Below, one piece after another: positions 1-13,810 of a stretch of 14,116 bases of DNA. A program made the translations under genes and the position numbers. The notes beneath the pieces were generated by a model that worked only from the letters and a program-made list of their open reading frames with translations, made no database searches and was not told the origin of the DNA. Each line of letters starts with the position of its first letter. Position 1 is the stretch's first letter. The stretch is from Paraphysomonas bandaiensis (Eukaryota > Protista > Chrysophyceae): the NCBI GenBank assembly GCA_965644295.1, contig CBFFRP010000084.1, positions 1 to 14,116 of the forward strand. Direction: 5' to 3'.

Positions 1-491
1 CGGTATACATATACAGCTGTATGTGCGAATACAGTACAGTACAAGATGAGGCAGCAGTACAGTGCAATCGTATAGTATCTATATACGATCTTCACACTAG
101 CTATAGAGGCTGTAGAGAATTGCTTAGTATAGCATACAGAGGGCGATGAAGACGGTGAAGATATGCTAGGTAGCATTGAGAAGGAAGTAAAGGTGAAATG
201 GGTTGGTATTTTAAGTGAATGTTTCATATGAGGAGTAAGAGGACTGTATTAAGTATTAAGTTAAGTACAGTCACTGTAGTGGTTGTGCTGTAGGTGTTGT
301 GTATATGCACAGGGATTGTACAGCTACAGGAGACAACCGAATACTCAGCGACAGAATGTATGCATGTATTGCCCCATATTGACAGCGTAACTAATCACTG
401 CGTGCGGCCCTCTAGTGGGTGCGGCTGAGTGCTACAACTACACTATGGTAATCATCAATGTGGCAATAATCAAGGAACTGTGAGAACTACC

Positions 492-1190
492 TCAGAAAAA
501 ATGAGGACATCTTCGGACCCGAAGTAAATAAATTTCTTGTTCTGTTAGACCAGTTAATTTTGGATTCCGCCTCTGAATTTGTTTATCAATTTCTGCCTTA
601 GTTTTTTGCCAACACCTCATTGTTTCATGGCCATCTGGTAGCATCTTCTTTTCCAGTATGTACTGATCAACAGTTTCGAGTGCTTCGGGTACACATGGAC
701 TGAATCTAGATTACATTCATTTCCTGTATGATGATTTCTGCTTTCCTCATCAACCACGTCGTCATGCGCTTAGCCCAATTGGGCACTCCGAATTGTTGAT
801 CAAAGATCAGTAACCACTTCATGCCACTTTTGTTATAACTATCACTCGCTACTATGTTCGAATTTGACATTTGACATATACCCCTTCAATAAAGTCGGAC
901 TCGCATCTTTTCGTGGTGCTCTGGGGGATAAGTACTGGAAACATTTCTCCAGAAAAATTACGAGTCAGCAGATAATCTTCTGCCCATACATAGCCATATT
1001 CTTGTGTGGGACAATGGACACTATATAAGTGTCACTTGTGTAGACATTTTTGGGCCTTGACGAATAAACAGGCATCCAAGAATAGACCCACCTCAAGGGC
1101 ATCCGGGGTATTGGGCTGCCTGCTGAAGTCAAGCATCCGTAGCGTTAAATAGTGGGATGCCATAGTTAAGCACTGACTCTTGAACTCCTA
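492..1190 (-). pseudogene. Possible degraded coding remnant of unknown family
   Basis: More balanced base composition than the AT-rich DNA at 1200-1900. Protein-like stretches occur in changing frames (FLEKCFQYLSPRAPRKDASPTLLKGYMSN, GMKWLLIFDQQFGVPNWAKRMTTWLMRKAE, PEALETVDQYILEKKMLPDGHETMRCWQKTKAEIDKQIQRRNPKL..RVRRCPHFF*). A 7-bp tandem duplication (862-875) separates the first two. No homology was recognised. Confidence 0.3.
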
Positions 1191-1216
1191 TAGCTAATAA
1201 TAAGACATTCACTACT
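1138..1216 (+). repeat. Dispersed direct repeat, copy A (pairs with 12502-12578)
   Basis: Manual alignment gives 66 of 79 columns identical (11 substitutions, 2 single-base gaps), same orientation. Confidence 0.85.
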
Positions 1217-1973
1217 GCATATCAGGATAAATCCTTCCAAGAAAGAATTCACTTTACAACATATATATTTATTTCATAAGTTTCACCTATGATGTGAACA
1301 AAAAGTAGTCCTATAATGTTTAATTATTAGTAATATATCAATATAGAATATAGCATTTGTTGTCTTCTCTTTTGAAATGGTATGATATTAACTCTTATAA
1401 ACATTTACTTAAACACCATAAAATCTCCTCGATTTTCCAATTCCCACACAATTGCAATATGTTTATCTCTTAGACAAACACGCACCATAAATTGAAATTA
1501 TATCCTTTGTAACTATATTCATGCTGTTTCATCTATTGCACATAAAAAATCATATCGTACAGCGGACTTAACATTGAACAGACAAAAATTCCAGTTATGA
1601 TGAGAAGTTCTTAGGTCTTATCCTTTTAATCTCATCATACGGTCACTATATACCATGCTCTATGATATACATTTTGTACTGTAAGTGGTACCATTCTCAT
1701 TGGAATCTTAATGACCACTTTAGTATACAGTGGAAATCTAAACATACTTTAAGCTACCAAAGAATTATTACAAGAATGTGCAGTTTATGATATATATAAC
1801 GGTATAACGCTCTTCTAAAGCATCAGGTGGGGGCTAGAAGTTTACTACATAGCAGCATAGTACTCTCTGGGCATCTGGTCACATCGAGTAAGATTCAAAG
1901 TTATAAGGCAACGGGATATTAATTGACCACCACAACTTGTACTATACAGAACTTAGCTATTAGTTTTGTTTAT

Positions 1974-3066
1974 CTATTTGCTACTTGATGTGTCGCTGCT
2001 TAAGAATAACGAATCGATATCGTCGTTAAATTGTCGAAGTTGAGCTTCCAATTCTCCCATATTCTTTTCCAGATTCAACCCATCGTTCAGGACCTACTCA
2101 AATTCCGACAATACACATAATAATACAAGGCCATCGGCTTAAAAAGAACAATAAAATACCTCTTGGTCATCTCCTTGAGCGTTTGACTCCTCACGCGCCT
2201 GTGACATTATTTCATTTGTTCGCTCTCATCAACAAAAGAATACGTAGAGGGTTCAATTATGTCAATATAAAATGTACGATCTACTACGTAGCCAAATCAA
2301 TTTCATAGCCTATATTGCACAGAGATATCACGCACAGGTACCCATTCCATTATTCTATTGTGACAGTCCGACGCATACAGTACCTGTAATTCAATTTTTT
2401 TGAACTTCGTTGTGTACTCACTCTCGTTTCGTCGCTTCTCCTGTTTTTCATCGTCTTCTTCATCCTGGTTGCTGCGAGGGGAACGCAAAAGGGTCTCAAG
2501 TGACTGCAGCTACATGATGTGTCACATATTTACAATTGAGGTTACGTCTACCCTGCTGCAGAAGTACCTTTGCTGTATTAGCAGTGTGTATTCTCGCTGC
2601 AACATTCGCTTCATCTTCAGTGTAAGGGTACTCAAAAGTTGGAATATCCTCAGGAAGCTCATCGCACTCATATTGGCTTCTATTCTCTTTCCACCTCTTC
2701 AAGTCTTCAAGTGCAGAGTCCATGTCACTGAGAAACATGCGATGCTCTAAGTCATCTCCTCCCTGCAGCAGAAACTATAACATATATACTACATCGTAAA
2801 CATCACCATACCATGTTAATTTTATCTTGTAATATATCTTCAATTAAGCTTGAATCATCAAGATAACCTTTACTTTCAGTACATGAGCTGTCTAGAGCCT
2901 GTGCTCCCACTAATCTTAAACGTGGTGTAGAAACAAACATTCCATCTGCTTCAAACTCATCATTTTTATCATCTCCATTCCAATCATCACTCCTTTCCGC
3001 TTCATCTTCAAATTCTTTTTCAATATCACTATTATTTTGATGTATATCTTCATTGTTTTGACTCAT
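1974..3066 (-). CDS. Spliced hypothetical protein, acidic and predicted helical/coiled-coil; likely exons 3066-2812, 2762-2568, 2509-2384, one uncertain segment, about 2198-2160, 2093-1974
   Basis: Three consecutive - strand ORFs join in frame through phase-0 GT-AG introns 2811-2763 (49 nt) and 2567-2510 (58 nt). A CAG|GTACTG donor lies at 2383. Intron 2159-2094 (66 nt) links AREESNAQGDDQE to VLNDGLNLEKNMGELEAQLRQFNDDIDSLFLSSDTSSSK*. The structure between 2383 and 2199 is ambiguous, and no domain was recognised. Confidence 0.7.
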
Positions 3067-3863
3067 TCTAACACTACTTTACTATTAAGTTACTAGAGAT
3101 GAGAACTATGAAATAACTGGATGGTAAGTTAATTATAATGATGAAACGATGATATGTAATGTGTCCCGCATGATAAGGGAATGGAATTAATCACTCTTAG
3201 TTTAGATGGAGTGATATCTAGTTATATATATGTCGTTAATACTTAAGAGGAAACTGTGAGTTGATATCTTGTACACACACATATAGAGCAGTCAGTACAT
3301 CAACTGTACATACAGTATTTTCCCGTTATTTTGTATATTTTGTTTACTTTAAAGCCTATAAAACTTATATTTTCTTACTTTTCCATAATTTTCTACTCCA
3401 AAAGCCATAATTCTTATCATTTCTAGATTCAAAATCGAAATATTAGATGCAAAAATCAAAGTACGTACGATATATCCTCAATTCACATTTCTTACGAATT
3501 TCCCAGAGTTTGTATGAACTGAAAATATCCATTCAAGATACTATCAAAAGTGTTGTATGCCTCGAATTCACTGACACTCATATGGTCTTGAAGGAATAAA
3601 AAGAAGTTCAAGATGAACCCATACTTCCGTCATCGCCAATATACACTTTCATCATATGATACTACGGAAATTTTGCAAGTAGGTAAATATACATAGAAAT
3701 CAACTGAAATTTTCAAGTTTAGGTTGTCATAATTACCATAATTAACTGATAGATCGGATATCTTCTATAAATTTATTACCTATCAAGTAGTACATTCATA
3801 GTGGGATATATGCCACTTTTATGAGATAGATGATGATGATTTAATTGATTTTATTGGGATACA
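3067..3863. promoter_or_regulatory. AT-rich intergenic region between divergent genes; candidate bidirectional promoter and 5' UTRs
   Basis: 797 bp separate the ATG at 3066 (-) from the ATG at 3864 (+). The region has no ORFs. The call is positional; no specific element was identified. Confidence 0.45.
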
Positions 3864-6800
3864 ATGACTGATGAAGGGAAGACAAGTATCTATGAAGGGG
3901 CAGATGTATGGAGTCTCTCAGATGACACAGAAGCTGTATGGAAGAAAGCAATAGTTAGAGATATTGGTGATATAGGAGATCTTGGAGGGAAAATAGAAGT
4001 TCATGTGGATTATTTGAATGGTGAAAGGGATATAATTAAGACCAGATATGAGGAGGATGAGGTCGATGAATTTCAGCATATTAAACCAAGAAGCTGTTGT
4101 CAATTTGATCAGATACCAGGATTAGATTTATCAGCATTACCAGTTATTAATGAACCGGAGATTGTGGAGTGTATGCAGCAATGTTTTAATGATAATATTC
4201 GTTATTTGTCTGTTGGTCCGGTGTTGATATCAATTAATCGACATGAGGTTATTCCTACTGTTGTCAACGAAAAGATGTACAAATCTTACTTTTTGATTGA
4301 CAAAGCACAACAAGACATGGTGAATCCTGTGCGTGCTGATGTGATAAACCTGGCCTATAGAAAGTACCTTAAGTTACATCCCGCCAACACTCCACTTCAG
4401 AGTGGGGGTAATCAGGCGGTCATAATGCTAGGGGAATCTGGAGCTGGAAAGTCCCGCTGTGCGCGGGAGCTCTGTAACCACATTGCCTTCATTGCGAATA
4501 AGCTTCGACGGCGCTCATCAACCGATACCTCATTTACTCCTGATATAAAGTTCTTCGATCAAGTCAATACCATTTTGGAGTCATTTGGTCACGCACAGAC
4601 GGTGAAAAACTCAAGCTCGTCAAGATTCTCCAAAGCGGTGAAGTTAACTTTCGATGAGAACACAGGGGCAATTAAAGGAGTCTTATTCCGCTGTTTTCAC
4701 TTGGAAATAGGTCGTGCGACCACTCAGTATCCTGGGGAATCAAATTACAACGTCTTTTTCGATGTATTCGACGACATATACTTCGCGGCCCAGGCGATGA
4801 GTAAGTACGGTATCGACAACCTTACGACTTTTAGATACGCTATGCACCGCCCTAAGACGGTGTTCCGTCCGGGTAAGTCGAGTTACAAGGATTTAGCTGC
4901 TGCATTGGATACGATCGCGAAAGTTCCCAAGGTGAAGCAGAATGCGTCAATTTTTGCTGTTTTAGCAGGAATTTTGCATCTTGGACAAATTGAGCTTGAG
5001 GAAGTAGATAACTATGGTGACGTGTCTACAGTTCTTTCTTCTGATCCGGCTAGTGTAGATCATATGAATAGAGTTTTTAAGTTACTGGGCATTTCACTGG
5101 AGGCACTTCTTGCTGTGATAGCGAAAAGGAATCTCAACTTCGCAGGAAACATCGTGGAGAAGAACTTAGACCTTGCAGAGTCCTTAGCAGCACGTGATAG
5201 CTTTGCGAGCCAGATGTACTCCGCACTGTTCCGATGGGTGATAAGCAAAATGAATTCGGGGATTGCGGAGTTGTTCAACTCTACAGATGAAGCCAGTGGT
5301 GGAGGTAGTCCTAGGAAGTCGGAAACCTCGTTCTCTGACAATGGAGATGCATTTGACAGTCCAGAATCATCTTTAGATAAGAACCAGTTCAGTATCTATG
5401 ACTTTACTGGGTTCGAATGCTTCGACAAGAATTCTCTTGAGCAGTTATGTGTCAACTACGCCAATGAGCGCCTGTATCAGTTCCTTAACCAAATGGTTTT
5501 TGTGCTTGACAAGGAGCTCTTCTACTCAGAGAATGTTAATGTAGGAGCCCTCACGTTCATAGACAATGCTTTAACTATACGCCTTATCGACAACAAATCA
5601 AATGGCATCTTTACAATTTGCGATGACCAATTGAAACTGAAATCTTCCACCTCTGATGAAAAGTTGGCGAGTATATTATACGCGCAGCACTCAAATAACA
5701 AAATGTTCATCGCTGGTCGAAATGAGCATAAGAACTGTCAATTTTTGATTCGGCACTACGTGTCGTTCGTTCGTTATGATGTAAATGGGTTTACAAATAG
5801 TAACAAAGTTGAGCCGGCTCAGGAAATACTGGAGTGTCTTCGATCGTCCACTATATCCTTTGTCCAGGAGGAGTTAGCCACATTTTGTGACATTCGGTCC
5901 TTGTTTAACCAGGCCCACTCCTCCGGTCTTGTTCCCCCTCCTTCCCTTGACCTCTCACCACCAAGAGCATCGTTTGGAGCTGGAAAGCAATCAAGTTCAC
6001 GAAATTTACTTGGTGGGCACTCCCGATCTCCCAGTTTACGGAATGTGATGCAAGAACGATCGCCGAGCCTACGTGGACACTCCTTCGAGCTAGCAGCGAA
6101 TGGCAACTCTCCTGTAACCGAGAATCGCCGTGATTCATTTTCACGGTCCAGGTCTGCTCACCCATCATTGGTACAGGATGGCTCCAGTCCATTTTCTGGC
6201 CGTCCCGGTCTTGGTCCCCGTTCTTCATCCATAATAAACAGGGGCGGGGCGAAAGTGTGCACCTTAACCTCTATGTTCTCGCTACAGATGGCAGAGGTTC
6301 TCGCAGAAGCAAAAGCTGCGGATACATCGTTTATGCTATGTATCAAACCGAATGACTCCCAGAACCCCACTCTTTTTGACCAGCGTATTGTGCTGCGGCA
6401 ACTACACCCTTTTGGGTGCGGAAGTATTTTGACATTTTACAAAAGGACATACCCCTATCGTATGGACCCAATATCATGGGTTAATCGGTACAGCCCCATC
6501 GCCGCGCTCGCTAAAAAGTCCAATCAGTTGACGTCTCAGTTTTTAACAGCTTTATGGGATTATAGGTCACATGGACTCGAGAGTCCATCGATAAAAGAGT
6601 GGAACGAGGTTGCCGGCCAACTGGTGCAAATATTACCGTATTTACCAGAACTCAAATCACTCTGTGCAAACGTGAAGGGTGTACAACAAAACGTGGGATA
6701 CACCATTAGCGATATCTGCACAGGCATTCGTGTAGGTGACAGTCATGTCATGATGACAGCAGTGTCGTACTATTACCTTAATGCTGCGCAACAGATGGCG
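3864..6800 (+). other. Myosin head: N-terminal SH3-like subdomain plus motor domain (divergent)
   Basis: GADVW..DTEAVWKKAIV (SH3-like); DLSALPVINEPEI..GPVLISIN; P-loop GESGAGKS at 4431-4454; LESFGHAQTVKNSSSSRFSK (switch I, 4608-4634); ILHLG; ARDSFASQMYSALFRWVI; switch II DFTGFE at 5400-5417 followed by NSLEQLCVNYANERL; FLIRHY..VRYD..GF; CIKPND; YPYR. The end coordinate is approximate. Confidence 0.95.
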
Positions 6801-9800
6801 GTCAAATTGATCGGCTGTCGTATTATGCATTTCTATCGAAGTCTCAGAGATAGTGCCCTACGCGAAGCTGCTATACGTATGCAGTGTCTGATTCGTTGCT
6901 ACATTGCCAAAGCACGCGTTCGGGATGCGAGAAAAAAATGGTATACTGTCATTAAAGTGCAGTCGATTGTTCGTGGCTTTCTCTCAAGGTTGGATAAATC
7001 GCGGGAGTCCCGAAGAGCGCGTAAAGAGTTCACCTCGAAAGTTATCAAAATTCAGGCAGTGTGGCGAGGTAGTTATATCAGGCACCGACTGGCTGTTATT
7101 CGTGATAGCGAGGCAGTTTATGGGAAGGCTGCACCTCTCCATTCATTAGGTTCGTTTGGAGCGTCTCGTACAGATAGCCATCGTGAAGATGTAGGTAATG
7201 TTGAGATCGAGGAGGTGTCAATGTCCGAGGAGGAGTCGATAAAGGAGCAAAGTGAAGAAGATGATTTCTCTCTAGAGCCTATTCAACTCAATGGCAATGC
7301 CTCGAATGATAAAGACACTAGGGATACAGGTGAAGAGAAAGTAGATTCTGTCAGTACCCAACACTACCACCATGAAACCTCGACTGAAAGTGTGACATCT
7401 CCTCCACAAGATGATACCACGGTGAGAGAGTCCACCACAATTGTTTCTCAGTACTCGTTTGGATCGGACACGAGAAGGTCATCATTCAACCCCCTATCTG
7501 TACCTGTATCTCGGACCCACCAAGCGAAGATCAGAGAACTACAGGCGACTATTGAAGCTCTGGAGGCGGAGAACTCACGTCTGAAGAGGAAACTGAAAGC
7601 AGAAGCTTCACCCGGTGAGGATGAAAAGCAGCAGGATGAGGACGAACACTATGTTGGACAGGATAAGGGGCCATACAGGAAAATGATATCGAATAGACAG
7701 TCCACCGTTGGGGAGTTCACTCCTCAAAGTGTATACGGCGGGGAATATGCTAGCCCACATACCATACAAAAGGTTGAAACGAGAAGACCAGAGTATGAGA
7801 TGTACATATCGCGGACATTAAAAGCGCTTGAAGATGATATCTCGTATCTGTTAGAACGTAAGTGTGTTTCGCATTCGCGGTGTGTTTTAAAAATGGTTCA
7901 TTTAGCGACCCCATTTTATAAGTTTGGAAGAAACGGAAGTGTACGGAAGACCCTGGTAATGATAACACCCGATTTTCAGTATTTGCAATGGAAGCCAAAG
8001 AATGTACTTCTCAAGTCGAGTAAGGACTGCAAAGGTGGTTTTAAATCGCTTCTCATTATTGTATACCTCACTAACTTGACATGTATATGTGCAGTTGATT
8101 TACGGCTAGTATGGAGACTGGTTGCTGGACAGTCTACGCCCCCTTTTGATGCATACAAGGGTGTGTCACATGGTCCAATGCCTCCTTCACGCTCTTTCTC
8201 ATTGGTTTATGGTTTCCGCTCGCTTGATTTGTGTGCCGTTGACGATGAAACCTATGAAGACTGGTTCGCCGGACTGCGATATATATTGCAGCTTATTAAT
8301 GGCGACCTGCAAGAAGCTGGAATCGACCGCCAGCTACTGCGTAAAAAATGGAATTTCTTGGATACGAAGCACCATGGTTTCTTGTCTCGTAGGGAAGTAA
8401 TTCAGCTAGTGTCCAATTTAGGTATCCAGTTTGACCGGGCAAGTTTTACGTCTGCGCTTTTACGTAGCACTATCGGCAATTCAACTCACGATGAAATAAC
8501 ATTCTCGCAATTTGATAGCCTGGTTTACCAGTTGCGAAGACGGTGAGTTTTTATAGAGTTGTGCACGTTGAATCTAATTCGTTCCTGTAGTCCGGATTTA
8601 GAGATCATATGGAGTAAGATACTGATCGGATACGATTTCTCACGTGATATCTTTCCTCTTCACGTGGATGGCGAGTTTGATACCGCCTTGCTTCATGAGG
8701 TGATTGGTATTCCGACGTTCAAACAGTTTTGGAAACTTTCCCAGGGTAGAGTGTTGACAAATGACGAAGCTCGCAAGATGATAGAGGAGGGTATGGGAGA
8801 AATGTATTCTGAAGACTTCCCTGTTTTATCATATAATGGGTTTATGAATATTATGACTAGTCATAAGAATGACGGGTTCGATCCTGTGCAGTCCGTGCCA
8901 TCTGCAAAAGATATGTCTCACCCGCTCCAGCACTACTATATTTCTACATCTGAAGGACTGACAGGAGACGTCCCCTACCATCAGGTGGATGATGATTCTT
9001 TGCTAGACGATCAACTACCAAACTGTTATGCGACTGCTATCGAGCAGGGATGTCGGGCTCTTGAACTGCGGTTGTTTGAGGACCGAATAAATCCCCGCGG
9101 AGAACAAACAGATTTGTACGTTGGGTCTAGCCGTGGTAGAGAAAGAGTTACTTTCAAAGGTTTGTCCTATGGTATTCACATGTTTTGTTGTGATATAGTT
9201 TATCAGATACCATTCTGTTTATTCAGCGGGTTGCCTTTGCGTACACTCAGTACCCATTGATTTTGATGATTGAAGTGTCTTGTGGAATCGCGCAACAGAA
9301 GCGAGCAGCTAGATTGCTCAAGAAGGTGTTTGGTGATGCGATATTCACTCCTGCTGAAGTTCAAAGCCAACTTCTACCATCACCCAACGAATTGAGGAAT
9401 AGGGTCATAATGTTTCTGACTCACCGTAAAAAAGATATTCAAACCGCCTATCGAGTGGACAATTCAGATATCGCTGCTGCATTATCGCCCTATGAATCGT
9501 TCGCCGACAATGGAAACAACCTGACCACCTCATCAGCTCCTTATGATGGGGAGTCTGAAGAGAAGGTCACAGAGTATGACTCCGAGAAAGAGTTCGCACT
9601 CAATTCGAAACTCAATACTGTGGAAGAAAACTCTCAAGGTAGCCCTGATCCGCGCAACTACGGTATTGTGGATGTTGAGTCATCCCTGCGCTCTGACTAC
9701 AAGAATCAAAGCGGTGTGGACGACAATGCTCGCGGTATTCATCCCAATTTAATGCGTTTACTACATTATTCCCATGGCATGCGTGTCGGTTGTCATCGTC

Positions 9801-11983
9801 TTCGAGACATGCTCGCTCGAATCGCTGAGTATCCTGATGCTGAAGAATCACTTACCAAATTTAATATGAAAAAGTTCTGGTATGTTTCGTTTTCTCCGTT
9901 TATATTCTTCTAATTATTTTGCAGTTTTATATATATGGATTCTAATACGAAGAAGTTTGGTTCATACGGTAGCATGGTTACTGCATGGGATTGTGGAATA
10001 TCATTTCTATCTCTATGTCACCGGTATCCATCTTTGGGTACAAAGATCAATCATGGCCGATTCAGGATGAATGGTGGCTGCGGATACGTACTGAAGCCCA
10101 TAAGACTTCGCACTCCGAGAGAACATCTGCCGTCAATGCCATATATATTGACCTTGCATGTTATCAGTGGCCGGGAGCTTCCCGTGTTTTCTTCGAAGAA
10201 GTCTAACATGACACAAGTTCACGAAACTCCTACCAAGATGATGTCCAATCCGCTCCTGCACAGTAAATCTAGACCTTTTGATTCAGAGGATGGAAAGTTT
10301 AGCGATGACGAAAGCCACCCACTACGTAACGTACGTGAAGCTGAGGTAGGATAAGTAATCGTGAGGGAGTATCCTATTGTAACATTACGTAACAGCTTGG
10401 GTCACACGGTCGTCACCACAAAGCCAAAAGTAAAGGATTCTACGTTGCCCTTGACCTCAACGGAACGCCCTGCGAGGAGGTTCAGCAAAAGACGAGGTGC
10501 ATTAAGAAGCATGGAAGAAATCCTTTTTGGAATGAGGTATAACAGTGACTCACATCCTGGCCAGCCTAATTTTTGTATGCAGGTTTTTTCTTTTGCATTG
10601 AAAGATACAACTCAGGGACAGCTAACGTTGAGGATATTTTCACATGACGAGTGCACTGCTTTTGTATCTATACCGTTATCATGCCTTCGTCAGGGATATA
10701 GAAATCTGACTCTATTCGAAGAACCAGAAGATAACAATTTTGTCATCCGAAAGCTTCCGCTGTCTGGACTTTTTGTCCGAGTGAAATTTGACACTGCTGC
10801 TGACTTTAACACCATTCAACAGGCCGACCTTCCTGCCACTCACACGGCGATTGAAAACCTTAAGGTTTTAGAGGATTGCCAGCGGTCAGATATGCCTGAA
10901 GTGGATGTAGCACATCGTGGACCACAACGAACGCCGCTGAAAGATCTTGAGGCGCCAGATTCTGTAGATCCTAGAGAGAGCTCTCCAAGGGGCCGGTCCT
11001 CGTCTCAGAAAGATGTGCGAGATATGTCAGGAGAGAAGAAAAAGGACTACTCATCCCGAGGACAATTGAGTTTTGATTCTGCTCCAGGCCTGACGAGTGG
11101 AACCAACCTGTCCCCTGAACGGAGTGATAAGCGCGTCCACCGCTCTTCTTCTCGCCACCGAGATAGAGAGCATGACCGTCACCGTAGCTCCAGTCGCGAT
11201 TTACATAGGCGAAGCAGTAGTCACCATGACGACGATCGTCGCCACAGGCGCTCTAGCCGAGATCTTCACCGTAGGAGTAGCAGCGGTCACCACCGTAGCA
11301 GTCGGGACTTGCATAGACGCAGCAGTAGTGGAGTACATGATCATCGCAGCAGTCGAGATTTGCATAGAAGGAGCAGCAGCGGTCATCACCGTCATCACCG
11401 GAGTTCTAGTCAAGACTTACATCGGCGTAGTAGTCATGATGAGTACAGAAGAAGCAGCAGCCATCGGGATGATTACGACAGAGATCGAGATCGGAGGCGT
11501 TCATCTGTGCACCGGCAAGAAAGCTCATCTTCTCGCCATCACCGAAGTAGTCGACGCAACAATGTTAGACGATACGATGATCGGTACCGACGCGTAAGTA
11601 GTTTGCAATCCGTGGATGAGAATGAGATGGAAGAGATAATTGAAACGATAGCGAACTCTCAGAAGCAGTCAGCTGTCACACAAAGTGGTGAAAATATTCA
11701 CCCCCCTGATGAGGAAGATTTGCCTCATTTCCAAGAAGAAGATACAGCGGAGTTCGAAAATGAGGATGAAAACGAGAGGCTTCCCAGTTATTCTTCTGCG
11801 GTAAACATGAAGCAAATGTACCTAGAAGAACTCCAGGAGACCACTCATAAGTCTGAAGCTGAGGACAATGGCGATATGTCACCGGCCAATCGAATTATTA
11901 AGGATGTGATATACGAAAGTGACGAACAAGTCGAAAATGCGGAAGTAGATGATGATTATGAAACGTGGAGATCGCCGGTGTAA
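3864..11983 (+). CDS. Myosin motor / PI-phospholipase C-like fusion protein, about 2607 aa; predicted exons 3864-8034, 8095-8542, 8591-9159, 9207-9879, 9925-10345, 10396-10536, 10583-11983
   Basis: Five consecutive + strand ORFs join through six GT-AG introns of 45-60 nt. The spliced length is 7824 nt (2608 codons including stop), and every junction keeps the frame. Most junctions restore a PLC motif: KDCK-VDLRLV, RRR-PDLEII, VTFK-DTILFIQRVAFAYTQYPLIL, KKF-CFIY, NPFWNE-VFSF. Myosin motifs (GESGAGKS, SSRF, DFTGFE, CIKPN) lie in exon 1. Confidence 0.93.
6867..7092 (+). other. Three IQ (calmodulin/light-chain binding) motifs, myosin neck
   Basis: AAIRMQCLIRCYIAK, TVIKVQSIVRGFLSR and KVIKIQAVWRGSYIR match IQxxxRGxxxR/K (the first has C at the G position). 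Confidence 0.9.
7518..7604 (+). other. Short coiled coil within the low-complexity linker between neck and PLC module
   Basis: HQAKIRELQATIEALEAENSRLKRKLKAE shows heptad-spaced I/L residues. Confidence 0.75.
7884..8290 (+). other. PLC-type PH domain (interrupted by intron 8035-8094)
   Basis: FYKFGRNGSVRKTLVMITPDFQYLQW, VDLRLVWRLVAGQSTPPF, SFSLVY..RSLDLCA...YEDWFAGLRYI. These resemble the PLC PH consensus I..I..IR.G..T, FSI.Y, LDL.A and W..GL..L. Confidence 0.9.
8035..8094 (+). other. Spliceosomal intron 1 (60 nt, in-frame, no stop codon)
   Basis: AAG|GTGGTT donor, CACTAAC branch site at 8069-8075, TGCAG acceptor. Removal deletes a 20-aa hydrophobic insert from the PH domain. Confidence 0.85.
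8334..8880 (+). other. PLC-type EF-hand array
   Basis: LLRKKWNFLDTKHHGFLSRREVIQLVSNL; ITFSQFDSLVYQLRRRPDLEII after splicing (the PLC R-P-E/D-L/I signature); FKQFWKLSQG; LSYNGFMNIMTSHKNDGFDP (compare LS.DGF..YL.S..N..F.P preceding the X domain). Confidence 0.85.
8543..8590 (+). other. Spliceosomal intron 2 (48 nt)
   Basis: GTGAGT donor (contains the apparent TGA stop of the 1560-aa ORF), CTAAT branch at 8574-8578, CCTGTAG acceptor. The frame is preserved. Confidence 0.93.
8910..9420 (+). other. PI-PLC X domain, catalytically degenerate
   Basis: DMSHPLQHYYISTS, LLDDQL, YATAIEQGCRALEL, FKDTI..I.RVAF..TQYPLILMIEVSC...QQKRAARLLKKVFGD, LPSPNELRNRVI. These follow the X-box consensus in order. Confidence 0.93.
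9160..9206 (+). other. Spliceosomal intron 3 (47 nt)
   Basis: AAG|GTTTGT donor and TTTATCAG acceptor. It resolves the frame change between ORFs 8559 and 9257 and restores FKD..I...AF...YP.IL. Confidence 0.92.
9737..10099 (+). other. PI-PLC Y domain, degenerate
   Basis: IHPNLMRLLHY, LTKFNMKKFCFIY, AWDCGISFLSL, INHGRFRMNGGCGYVLKP. The last is a near-canonical Y-box end (N.G.F..NG.CGYVLKP). Confidence 0.93.
9880..9924 (+). other. Spliceosomal intron 4 (45 nt)
   Basis: GTATGT donor, TTCTAAT branch at 9908-9914, TTTTGCAG acceptor. It is T-rich and removes an in-frame TAA. Confidence 0.93.
10346..10395 (+). other. Spliceosomal intron 5 (50 nt)
   Basis: GAG|GTAGGA donor and AACAG acceptor. It removes the TAA at 10352-10354 and enters the frame encoding the C2 core. 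Confidence 0.85.
10537..10582 (+). other. Spliceosomal intron 6 (46 nt)
   Basis: GAG|GTATAA donor, CCTAAT branch at 10565-10570, TGCAG acceptor. It joins NPFWNE to VFSF. Confidence 0.92.
11189..11434 (+). repeat. Coding tandem repeat, 5 x SS[R/Q]DLHRRSS, in an Arg/Ser/His-rich tail
   Basis: Five near-identical peptide copies separated by short His-rich spacers in the last exon. The surrounding sequence (about 11130-11600) is R/S/H/D low complexity and is followed by an acidic C-terminus. Confidence 0.92.
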
Positions 11984-13167: not shown

Positions 13168-13810
13168 GATCGACGGCCGCATCGCACGAGCCCCCTGCTC
13201 ACGGATGTCCAATCCCTCCGCAGTCAACGGACGCTGGAGGCATACACTGCCATCAGAGACCAACGCTACGGTCACAATCCCGACCGGGCACCTGGGTATT
13301 GGACGGACAGTGGGACACTACTTCCGCGCAAACTGGCACAAGCAGATAGTGGTCCCTCAAAGGATAAAGATAGCTCCTACCTACGCCAGCGAGTACTCAA
13401 TGCAGCATTGACATGGGACAAATCTTTCAGCATAGGGAGAAACCGGGCTAAAACCAAACACGGACTCGACCTGGCCAAAGCCGCATGTTCTGACTGCGGA
13501 TTTCGGCTAGACTCACTCAAGCACATGTGTCTAGACTGTACAAATGACGCCATCACGCAGATAAGAGAGTCTGCATTTCACAGCCACAAAAACGCGCTTC
13601 AAGAATTACTGAGAAATCCGGTCCTACCCCACTGGACCACCACCGCACTACAGCGGCTCTCCAGCAGGGCCTGGAACCCCTCCGTTTCACAGGTGGAGAG
13701 ATTTTGGACAGGTACCATCACCACTGCACAACTCGAGACGGTTTTTGGAGATCACATCCATGAGTCCCTGACACCCCAAGGACTGCGCAACATTGAATCA
13801 GCTTGCTTCT
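13168..13810 (+). mobile_element. Probable truncated non-LTR retrotransposon (LINE-like) ORF fragment with a C-terminal CCHC zinc knuckle
   Basis: The frame of ORF 13408 is open from 13168 (after TGA 13165-13167) to 13851. CSDCGFRLDSLKHMCLDC at 13486-13539 is C-x2-C-x8-H-x4-C with the D/E-S/T-x2-H signature found after RT in non-LTR elements. The segment is visibly C/GC-rich against AT-rich flanks, with an abrupt edge near 13810. No RT or endonuclease motif is present. Confidence 0.55.

What the first reader, a model, noticed from the sequence alone, without database searches (positions are those of the whole stretch)
8910..10099. The PLC barrel looks like a pseudoenzyme: both catalytic histidines and most ligands are lost
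Seen by manual alignment to PLC-delta1. SSSHNTY becomes STSEGLT (His311 and Asn312 lost). ELDCWD becomes ELRLFE (Glu341 kept, Asp343 to Arg). IYHG becomes YVGS (His356 lost). LENHC becomes IEVSC (Glu390 kept). ILLKGK becomes VIMFLT (Lys438/440 lost). SRIYP becomes CFIYM (Arg549 lost, Tyr551 kept). Structural motifs (GCR.LEL, YP.IL, QQ..A..L...FGD, LPSP..L, NGGCGYVLKP) are well conserved. Established: these residues perform acid/base catalysis, Ca2+ binding and inositol-phosphate recognition, and inactive PLC-like proteins (PRIP/PLCL) act as scaffolds. Inference: the fold is kept for cargo or membrane binding rather than hydrolysis.
Basis: partly seen in the sequence, partly recalled or inferred. 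Interest (0 to 1): 0.85.

Follow-up and report, generated by a model that had tools for sequence, protein, structure and literature searches.

The report
Myosin carrying a dead phospholipase C
A marine flagellate (Paraphysomonas) makes one 2,591-residue protein that joins an actin motor to a whole phospholipase C whose active site has been dismantled but whose fold is strongly conserved, so the former enzyme most likely serves as the motor's cargo-binding tail.

Summary
Observation confirmed. The stretch is the X/Y barrel of a spliced, expressed gene (3864-11983, 7 introns, all seen in RNA contigs) encoding myosin motor-3 IQ-coiled coil-PH-EF-X-Y-C2-Arg/Ser/His tail. Against PLC-delta1, 8 of 11 active-site residues are changed (H311E, N312G, D343R, H356V, K438F, K440T, S522C, R549F); E341, E390 and Y551 remain. 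The same pattern (acid-Gly at 311-312, Arg343, no His356) holds in 11 of 11 clade members, 8 of them seen joined to a myosin. Two more distant fused paralogues also lack both histidines, while the genome's two free PLCs are intact. The barrel is under purifying selection, and an orthologue's model matches PLC-delta1 (Z 31.9). So it is a maintained pseudoenzyme, not decay. The PH domain's PIP2 arginine and most EF-hand and C2 calcium ligands are lost too, yet PH-EF is the best-conserved part; this favours a protein-binding cargo tail over specific lipid binding. Dead PLCs are known (PRIP); one as a myosin tail is in neither myosin survey I searched. The scan had already met sister genes in this genome. 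Inactivity is inferred, not assayed.

The parts
3864..11983 (+). Whole gene: myosin-pseudo-PLC fusion, 8 exons, 2591 aa
   Evidence: Stop-free spliced model; one 8172-nt RNA contig spans motor to tail with all 7 introns removed
4125..6833 (+). Myosin motor domain; P-loop GESGAGKS at 4431, switch I at 4608, switch II DFTGFE at 5400; divergent, with a Ser/Arg/Pro insert near 5904-6263
   Evidence: Pfam Myosin_head E 2e-98; motifs
6876..7118 (+). Three IQ-type motifs (lever arm)
   Evidence: Pfam IQ E 1e-5; pattern scan finds three
7506..7613 (+). Short predicted coiled coil
   Evidence: Weak coiled-coil family hits at aa 1216-1266; inference
7836..8303 (+). PLC-type PH domain (introns 7858-7905, 8035-8094); Thr at the position of the PIP2-binding Arg40 (codon 7950)
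   Evidence: Clade profile hits PLC-delta1 PH 1mai E 5e-11; PH_12 in orthologues
8304..8909 (+). EF-hand region (intron 8543-8590); EF1 and EF2 loops lack most Ca2+ ligands that the free PLCs keep
8910..9427 (+). PI-PLC X box (intron 9160-9206) with H311E, N312G, D343R, H356V, K438F, K440T; E341 and E390 kept
9428..9736 (+). Acidic X-Y linker, poorly conserved, predicted disordered
9737..10111 (+). PI-PLC Y box (intron 9880-9924) with S522C, R549F; Y551 kept
10142..10792 (+). C2 domain with a long insert (introns 10346-10395, 10537-10582); most Ca2+-loop aspartates lost
   Evidence: Pfam C2 in orthologue P0004; fold match
11075..11617 (+). Arg/Ser/His-rich low-complexity tail, followed by an acidic end closing in W-x-x-P-V
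   Evidence: Composition; similar tails in C218, P0004, P0014 and L015

Best explanation
The barrel is a catalytically dead PI-PLC domain inside a whole PH-EF-X-Y-C2 module that serves as the globular tail of an unconventional myosin. Shown: one expressed fusion; loss of the acid/base pair, of Ca2+ ligands N312 and D343 and of the phosphate ligands; conservation of these losses and of the fold. Inferred: a copy of the lineage's own PLC-delta-like gene fused behind a myosin lever arm, probably once, and lost hydrolysis; Arg343 now fills the Ca2+ site between the retained carboxylates (311, 341, 390) and plugs the pocket; the rigid four-domain unit binds a protein partner on a membrane cargo, mainly through the very conserved PH-EF surface, helped by unspecific electrostatic contact with anionic lipid, while the motor moves or holds that cargo on actin. 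The two intact free PLCs keep the signalling role.
For: Site table and published roles of the residues (PMC12195575, PMC10149971). An Asp-to-Arg change in the X box, D210R, is the standard dead mutant of PLC-zeta (PMC3195387); that D210 equals D343 is my own knowledge. Same pattern in 11/11 clade members; motor in the same protein or just upstream in 8. X+Y pN 0.07 against pS 0.71 versus paralogue C218, motor pN 0.11. PH and EF1-2 are 76-95% identical among four close relatives whose motors are 41-85% identical by segment. Model of orthologue P0004 matches PLC-delta1, Z 31.9, rmsd 3.4, 472 aligned. All 12 His-less modules fall on one branch (SH-aLRT 94) next to a Mallomonas PLC, share intron positions with the free PLCs and all four fused paralogues have Thr at PH Arg40.
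Against: No activity or binding data. No partner identified. The confident model used an alignment rich in active PLCs; a clade-only model was poor (pLDDT 49). Side-chain geometry could not be inspected. The motor is divergent (switch I N-S-S-S-S-R-F-S-K, long loop insert) and its motility is unproven. Single origin is not rejected (p-AU 0.37) but not shown; C188 and C255 are long branches.
Confidence: 0.6

Rival explanations
1. Dead enzyme, but the module is mainly a lipid anchor in the manner of PRIP: it ties the motor directly to phosphoinositide or other anionic membranes.
For: Whole PLC membrane-facing architecture kept; PH keeps the beta1 Lys and other basic residues; the loop that holds Y358 and F360 has become basic (S-S-R, R-N-R, K-S-K) and the Y box is net basic; PRIP works through its PH domain (PMC5511194).
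Against: PH Arg40 position is Thr in all fused copies (register may slip by one, giving Leu); PRIP loses PIP2 binding on a single Arg-to-Gln change; K438, K440, R549 and the hydrophobic residue at 360 are lost; C2 and EF Ca2+ ligands are lost. Lipid binding alone would hardly need 80-95% identity.
Confidence: 0.22
2. The pocket has been rebuilt into a new active or ligand site: acid 311, E341, R343 and E390 act without Ca2+, with Arg taking the metal's place as Arg69 does in Bacillus PI-PLC (own knowledge), on another substrate or a basic peptide.
For: D/E311, G312, E341, R343, E390 and a new Asp next to position 353 are invariant in the clade although the X box is only about 54% identical by column; they sit at or near the C-terminal ends of barrel strands in the model.
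Against: No general acid at 356 (Val, Leu, Met); no invariant histidine elsewhere (the His at 523, 441 and 578 positions vary); Bacillus-type enzymes still need both histidines (own knowledge); the distant fused paralogues have different residues (C188 D/E/H/E, C255 P/Q/H/D), so there is no family-wide site. A structural salt bridge explains the pattern more simply.
Confidence: 0.1
3. The module is mostly regulatory: it folds back on the motor to switch it off, or binds and tunes the two active PLCs or their regulators.
For: Tail-to-head autoinhibition is common in myosins (own knowledge); long charged linkers and an Arg/Ser/His tail fit phospho-regulation.
Against: No direct evidence; the trypanosome dead PLC does not modulate its active paralogue in vitro (PMC10051276). 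Not exclusive with cargo binding.
Confidence: 0.07
4. Artefact or decay: mis-assembly, wrong splicing or a dying gene.
For: Window start overlaps another contig end; PLC scores are low.
Against: One RNA contig spans the fusion; introns seen in up to four runs; open frame of 2591 aa; purifying selection; orthologues in independent samples.
Confidence: 0.01

Closest known systems
Eukaryotic PI-PLC delta type (rat PLC-delta1, PDB 1qas/1djg)
   Same: PH-EF-X-Y-C2 order, barrel fold (Z 31.9), structural motifs, E341, E390, Y551
   Different: No H311, N312, D343, H356, K438, K440, R549; PH Arg40, EF and C2 Ca2+ ligands lost; fused behind a myosin
PRIP-1/2 (PLCL1/2), vertebrate inactive PLC-related proteins
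   Same: Delta-like domain order without PLC activity; scaffolds tied to trafficking (PMC5390332, PMC5511194)
   Different: PRIP is a free protein that binds IP3 and PIP2 through an intact PH Arg; here that position is Thr, the pocket is far more altered, and the module is covalently joined to a motor. Its nearest active kin here are chrysophyte PLCs, so the origin looks independent (PRIP itself was not in the tree)
Trypanosoma brucei PI-PLC-like; Arabidopsis PLC8/PLC9
   Same: PLC relatives without activity (TbPI-PLC-like, PMC10051276) or without both histidines (AtPLC8/9, PMC11174929) that still matter to the cell
   Different: X plus PDZ only, or EF-X-Y-C2 only; no motor
Unconventional myosins of stramenopiles (e.g. 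classes with a C-terminal PH domain)
   Same: Motor-IQ-coiled coil-globular tail plan; a sister myosin in this genome ends in a PLC-type PH domain alone
   Different: No PLC tail is mentioned in the text or held supplements of two surveys (PMC3942036, PMC5583752), whose text names no chrysophyte where I looked; class not assigned here

Membership tests
Active eukaryotic PI-PLC | X and Y boxes forming a TIM barrel, with EF and C2 | tested here: met
   orthologue model vs 1qas Z 31.9, alignment-biased; clade-only model inconclusive
Active eukaryotic PI-PLC | Catalytic His311 and His356 | tested here: not met
   Glu and Val
Active eukaryotic PI-PLC | Ca2+ ligands N312, E341, D343, E390 | tested here: not met
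   Gly, Glu, Arg, Glu
Active eukaryotic PI-PLC | Head-group ligands K438, K440, S522, R549, Y551 | tested here: not met
   Phe, Thr, Cys, Phe, Tyr
Active eukaryotic PI-PLC | PIP2 hydrolysis | not testable with these tools
   Needs an assay
PRIP/PLCL | PH-EF-X-Y-C2 with lost catalytic residues | tested here: met
PRIP/PLCL | PH domain with the Arg needed for IP3/PIP2 binding | tested here: not met
   Thr (or Leu) at the Arg40 position
PRIP/PLCL | Common descent with vertebrate PLCL; PP1, PP2A and GABARAP binding | not tested
   No PRIP sequence in the tree; nearest active relative was a Mallomonas PLC
Myosin superfamily | Motor domain with P-loop, switch I, switch II, followed by IQ motifs | tested here: met
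Myosin superfamily | Placement in a named class | not tested
   No classified reference set was available; tree holds only genome and metagenome motors
Myosin superfamily | Actin-activated ATPase and motility | not testable with these tools
   Needs an assay
Ca2+-independent bacterial PI-PLC mechanism | Arg at the D343 position together with both histidines (own knowledge) | tested here: not met
   Arg present, both histidines absent

The most novel reading that the evidence does not exclude
The clade-invariant acid311-Glu341-Arg343-Glu390 set is a rebuilt, calcium-free active or ligand site, so this myosin carries a PLC barrel with new chemistry or a new ligand rather than an inert plug.
Probability: 0.1. 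Interest if true: 0.85.

Novelty: new variant of a known kind. Interest (0 to 1): 0.55.

Why it matters
It adds a tail type to the myosin superfamily: an entire four-domain signalling enzyme recycled as a non-catalytic module, kept in four copies in one genome and conserved across related flagellates. It is also an apparently independent origin of a pseudo-PLC, with intact paralogues in the same genome as natural controls, which makes the question 'what does a PLC do apart from hydrolysis' testable. It points to actin-based membrane transport in a grazing flagellate lineage that the myosin surveys I read do not name. Limits: dead PLCs and odd myosin tails are each known, the range seems narrow, and no function is shown.

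Tried and rejected
Wrong splicing hiding the histidines: rejected, the H311, E341/D343 and H356 positions lie within one exon and all introns are confirmed. Replacement histidines: candidates at the 441, 523 and 578 positions are not invariant. A fused copy with an intact site: none found in three homologue searches and one representative search. A fifth fused copy on C36: it is an assembly overlap with this window. Two scans of metagenome contigs gave nothing. Atlas search returned only ordinary PLC clusters. Four paper searches for myosin with PLC found no description. Clade-only structure prediction was too poor to use. An 18S search failed technically; the genus came from a 100% protein match instead. 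W555 and L320 were dropped as ridge markers because active PLCs vary there or the alignment is unsure. Papers on PRIP's exact substitutions and the Ellis 1998 mutagenesis were not held. My recollection that the trypanosome protein modulates its active paralogue was wrong.

Full report
Setting. The window is a whole contig (C84) of a 62.6-Mb eukaryotic assembly with 45-60-nt introns. A myosin from the Paraphysomonas transcriptome MMETSP1103 (taxid 36769, Chrysophyceae) is 100% identical to a gene of this genome, so the organism is a Paraphysomonas. The finding lies inside one gene, 3864-11983 on the + strand. Seven introns (7858-7905, 8035-8094, 8543-8590, 9160-9206, 9880-9924, 10346-10395, 10537-10582) give a stop-free protein of 2591 aa. 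All seven are removed in contigs of two runs taken for RNA (their kind is a guess of the tool, but they are spliced) and several in two metatranscriptomes; one 8172-nt contig runs from the motor to the tail. Order: myosin motor, three IQ, short coiled coil, PH, EF hands, X, linker, Y, C2, Arg/Ser/His tail. It was used only inside local scripts, and folding was done on a natural orthologue (P0004).

Observation. Numbering was tied to rat PLC-delta1 through the alignment of an active PLC with PDB 1qas. The window has E at H311, G at N312, E341, R at D343, V at H356, E390, F at K438, T at K440, C at S522, F at R549 and Y551. Published roles: H311 and H356 are catalytic (PMC10149971); N312, E341, D343, E390 bind Ca2+; K438, K440, S522, R549, Y551 bind the head group; L320, Y358, F360, L529, W555 form the membrane ridge (PMC12195575). 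In 24 PLCs chosen only for having the SHN motif, the other eight key positions are all kept. An Asp-to-Arg change in the X box, D210R, is the routine inactive control of PLC-zeta (PMC3195387); I recall it as the D343 position but could not read a paper that says so.

Is it conserved? The genome has six PLC loci. Four lie behind a myosin motor (C84, C218, C188, C255); my models of C218 and C188 are open from motor to C2, and that of C255 from PH to C2. All four lack both histidines. The two free PLCs (C308, C331) are intact. Outside the genome, full-length or partial orthologues come from ENA, JGI and Logan assemblies. In 11 clade members with the X box, position 311 is Asp (9) or Glu (2), 312 Gly, 341 Glu, 343 Arg, 390 Glu, and 356 is Val, Leu or Met. 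Eight have the motor in the same protein or directly upstream on the contig. No fused copy with an intact site was found. Between C84 and C218 synonymous sites are saturated (pS 0.71) while the X and Y boxes have pN 0.07, below the motor's 0.11. The barrel is thus maintained, not decaying.

Fold. An AlphaFold model of the orthologue's EF-X-Y-C2 (pLDDT 73, pTM 0.73) matches PLC-delta1 best (Foldseek E 3e-29; Z 31.9, rmsd 3.4 over 472 residues). Its alignment held many active PLCs, so this shows compatibility with the fold, not independence; a clade-only model was poor. Side chains could not be inspected. By sequence, no histidine in the barrel can stand in: those near strands 5, 6 and 8 are replaced by Asn, Ser, Tyr or Arg in some members.

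The rest of the module. The PH domain has Thr where PLC-delta1 has the PIP2-binding Arg40 (Leu if the register slips by one); all four fused paralogues have Thr there and the free PLCs have Arg or Lys. PRIP loses PIP2 binding on one such Arg-to-Gln change (PMC5511194; the equivalence of the positions is my own knowledge). EF1 and EF2 loops and the C2 loops have lost most aspartates that the free PLCs keep. The ridge loop at 358-360 has turned from hydrophobic to basic. Yet PH and EF1-2 are the best-conserved parts: 76-95% identity to C218, P0001, P0002 and P0004, against 59-83% for X and 41-85% for motor segments. Such conservation without the lipid and calcium ligands suggests a protein interface.

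Origin. All 12 histidine-less modules lie on one side of a branch (SH-aLRT 94, quick tree, two long branches), the core ten at 100, next to a Mallomonas PLC. Introns sit at the same places as in the free PLCs. The fused motors fall in one clade with nine motor sequences that carry no PLC tail where I checked; one origin is not rejected (p-AU 0.37) and not proven. The simplest history is one fusion of a duplicated chrysophyte PLC, loss of catalysis, then duplication.

Mechanism. Best reading (0.6): a motor whose globular tail is a dead PLC that binds a protein partner on membrane cargo, with Arg343 plugging the former calcium site between three carboxylates. Rivals: direct lipid anchor (0.22), rebuilt active or ligand site (0.10), mainly autoinhibitory or PLC-regulating (0.07), artefact (0.01). 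Taken alone, the claim that it has no PLC activity stands at about 0.9. What the cargo is remains unknown; feeding or scale traffic are guesses.

Comparison and novelty. It works like PRIP/PLCL in being a delta-type PLC without catalysis, but fails PRIP's PH test and seems to have arisen separately. Other inactive or histidine-less PLCs exist in trypanosomes and Arabidopsis. A PLC tail is not mentioned in the text or held supplements of two myosin surveys (figures are not held and one supplement is cut), nor in four literature searches. Earlier agents of this scan reported sister genes in this genome with the same verdict; my reading was written before that look-up, and their agreement is not independent evidence. 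Verdict: real, conserved pseudoenzyme in an apparently undescribed myosin architecture; new variant of a known kind; interest 0.55.

Noticed in passing
window 1-5919: Matches the end of contig C36 at about 100% (one indel in the 2.5 kb aligned): an unmerged assembly overlap, so the C36 myosin hit is not a separate gene.
   Followed up: yes
window 883-1139: Interspersed repeat of about 260 bp with at least 40 copies at 80-83% identity in the genome.
   Followed up: partly
window 13168-13802: Interspersed repeat of about 635 bp, at least 40 copies at 87-94% identity; overlaps two short ORFs without Pfam hit (one tested); perhaps the end of a mobile element.
   Followed up: partly
window 2000-3070, minus strand: Short acidic ORFs separated by intron-sized gaps; probably a small spliced gene divergent from the myosin; no Pfam hit.
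   Followed up: no
window 5904-6263: About 120-aa Ser/Arg/Pro-rich insert in the motor at about the loop 2 position; 79% identical in C218 and 40-48% in orthologues.
   Followed up: partly
L042 / G000:C152:23267-27288: Myosin of the sister motor clade, identical to a Paraphysomonas transcriptome protein (MMETSP1103); ends in a PLC-type PH domain without the rest of the PLC.
   Followed up: partly
L014 / G000:C331 about 30900-34900, minus strand: An open frame of over 1300 codons of Ser/Pro/Gln repeats runs up to the PH exon of an intact PLC; it may be a very long N-terminal extension.
   Followed up: no
genome G000: Myosin_head gives 99 exon matches on dozens of loci, a very large myosin repertoire, including open frames above 5000 codons.
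   Followed up: no
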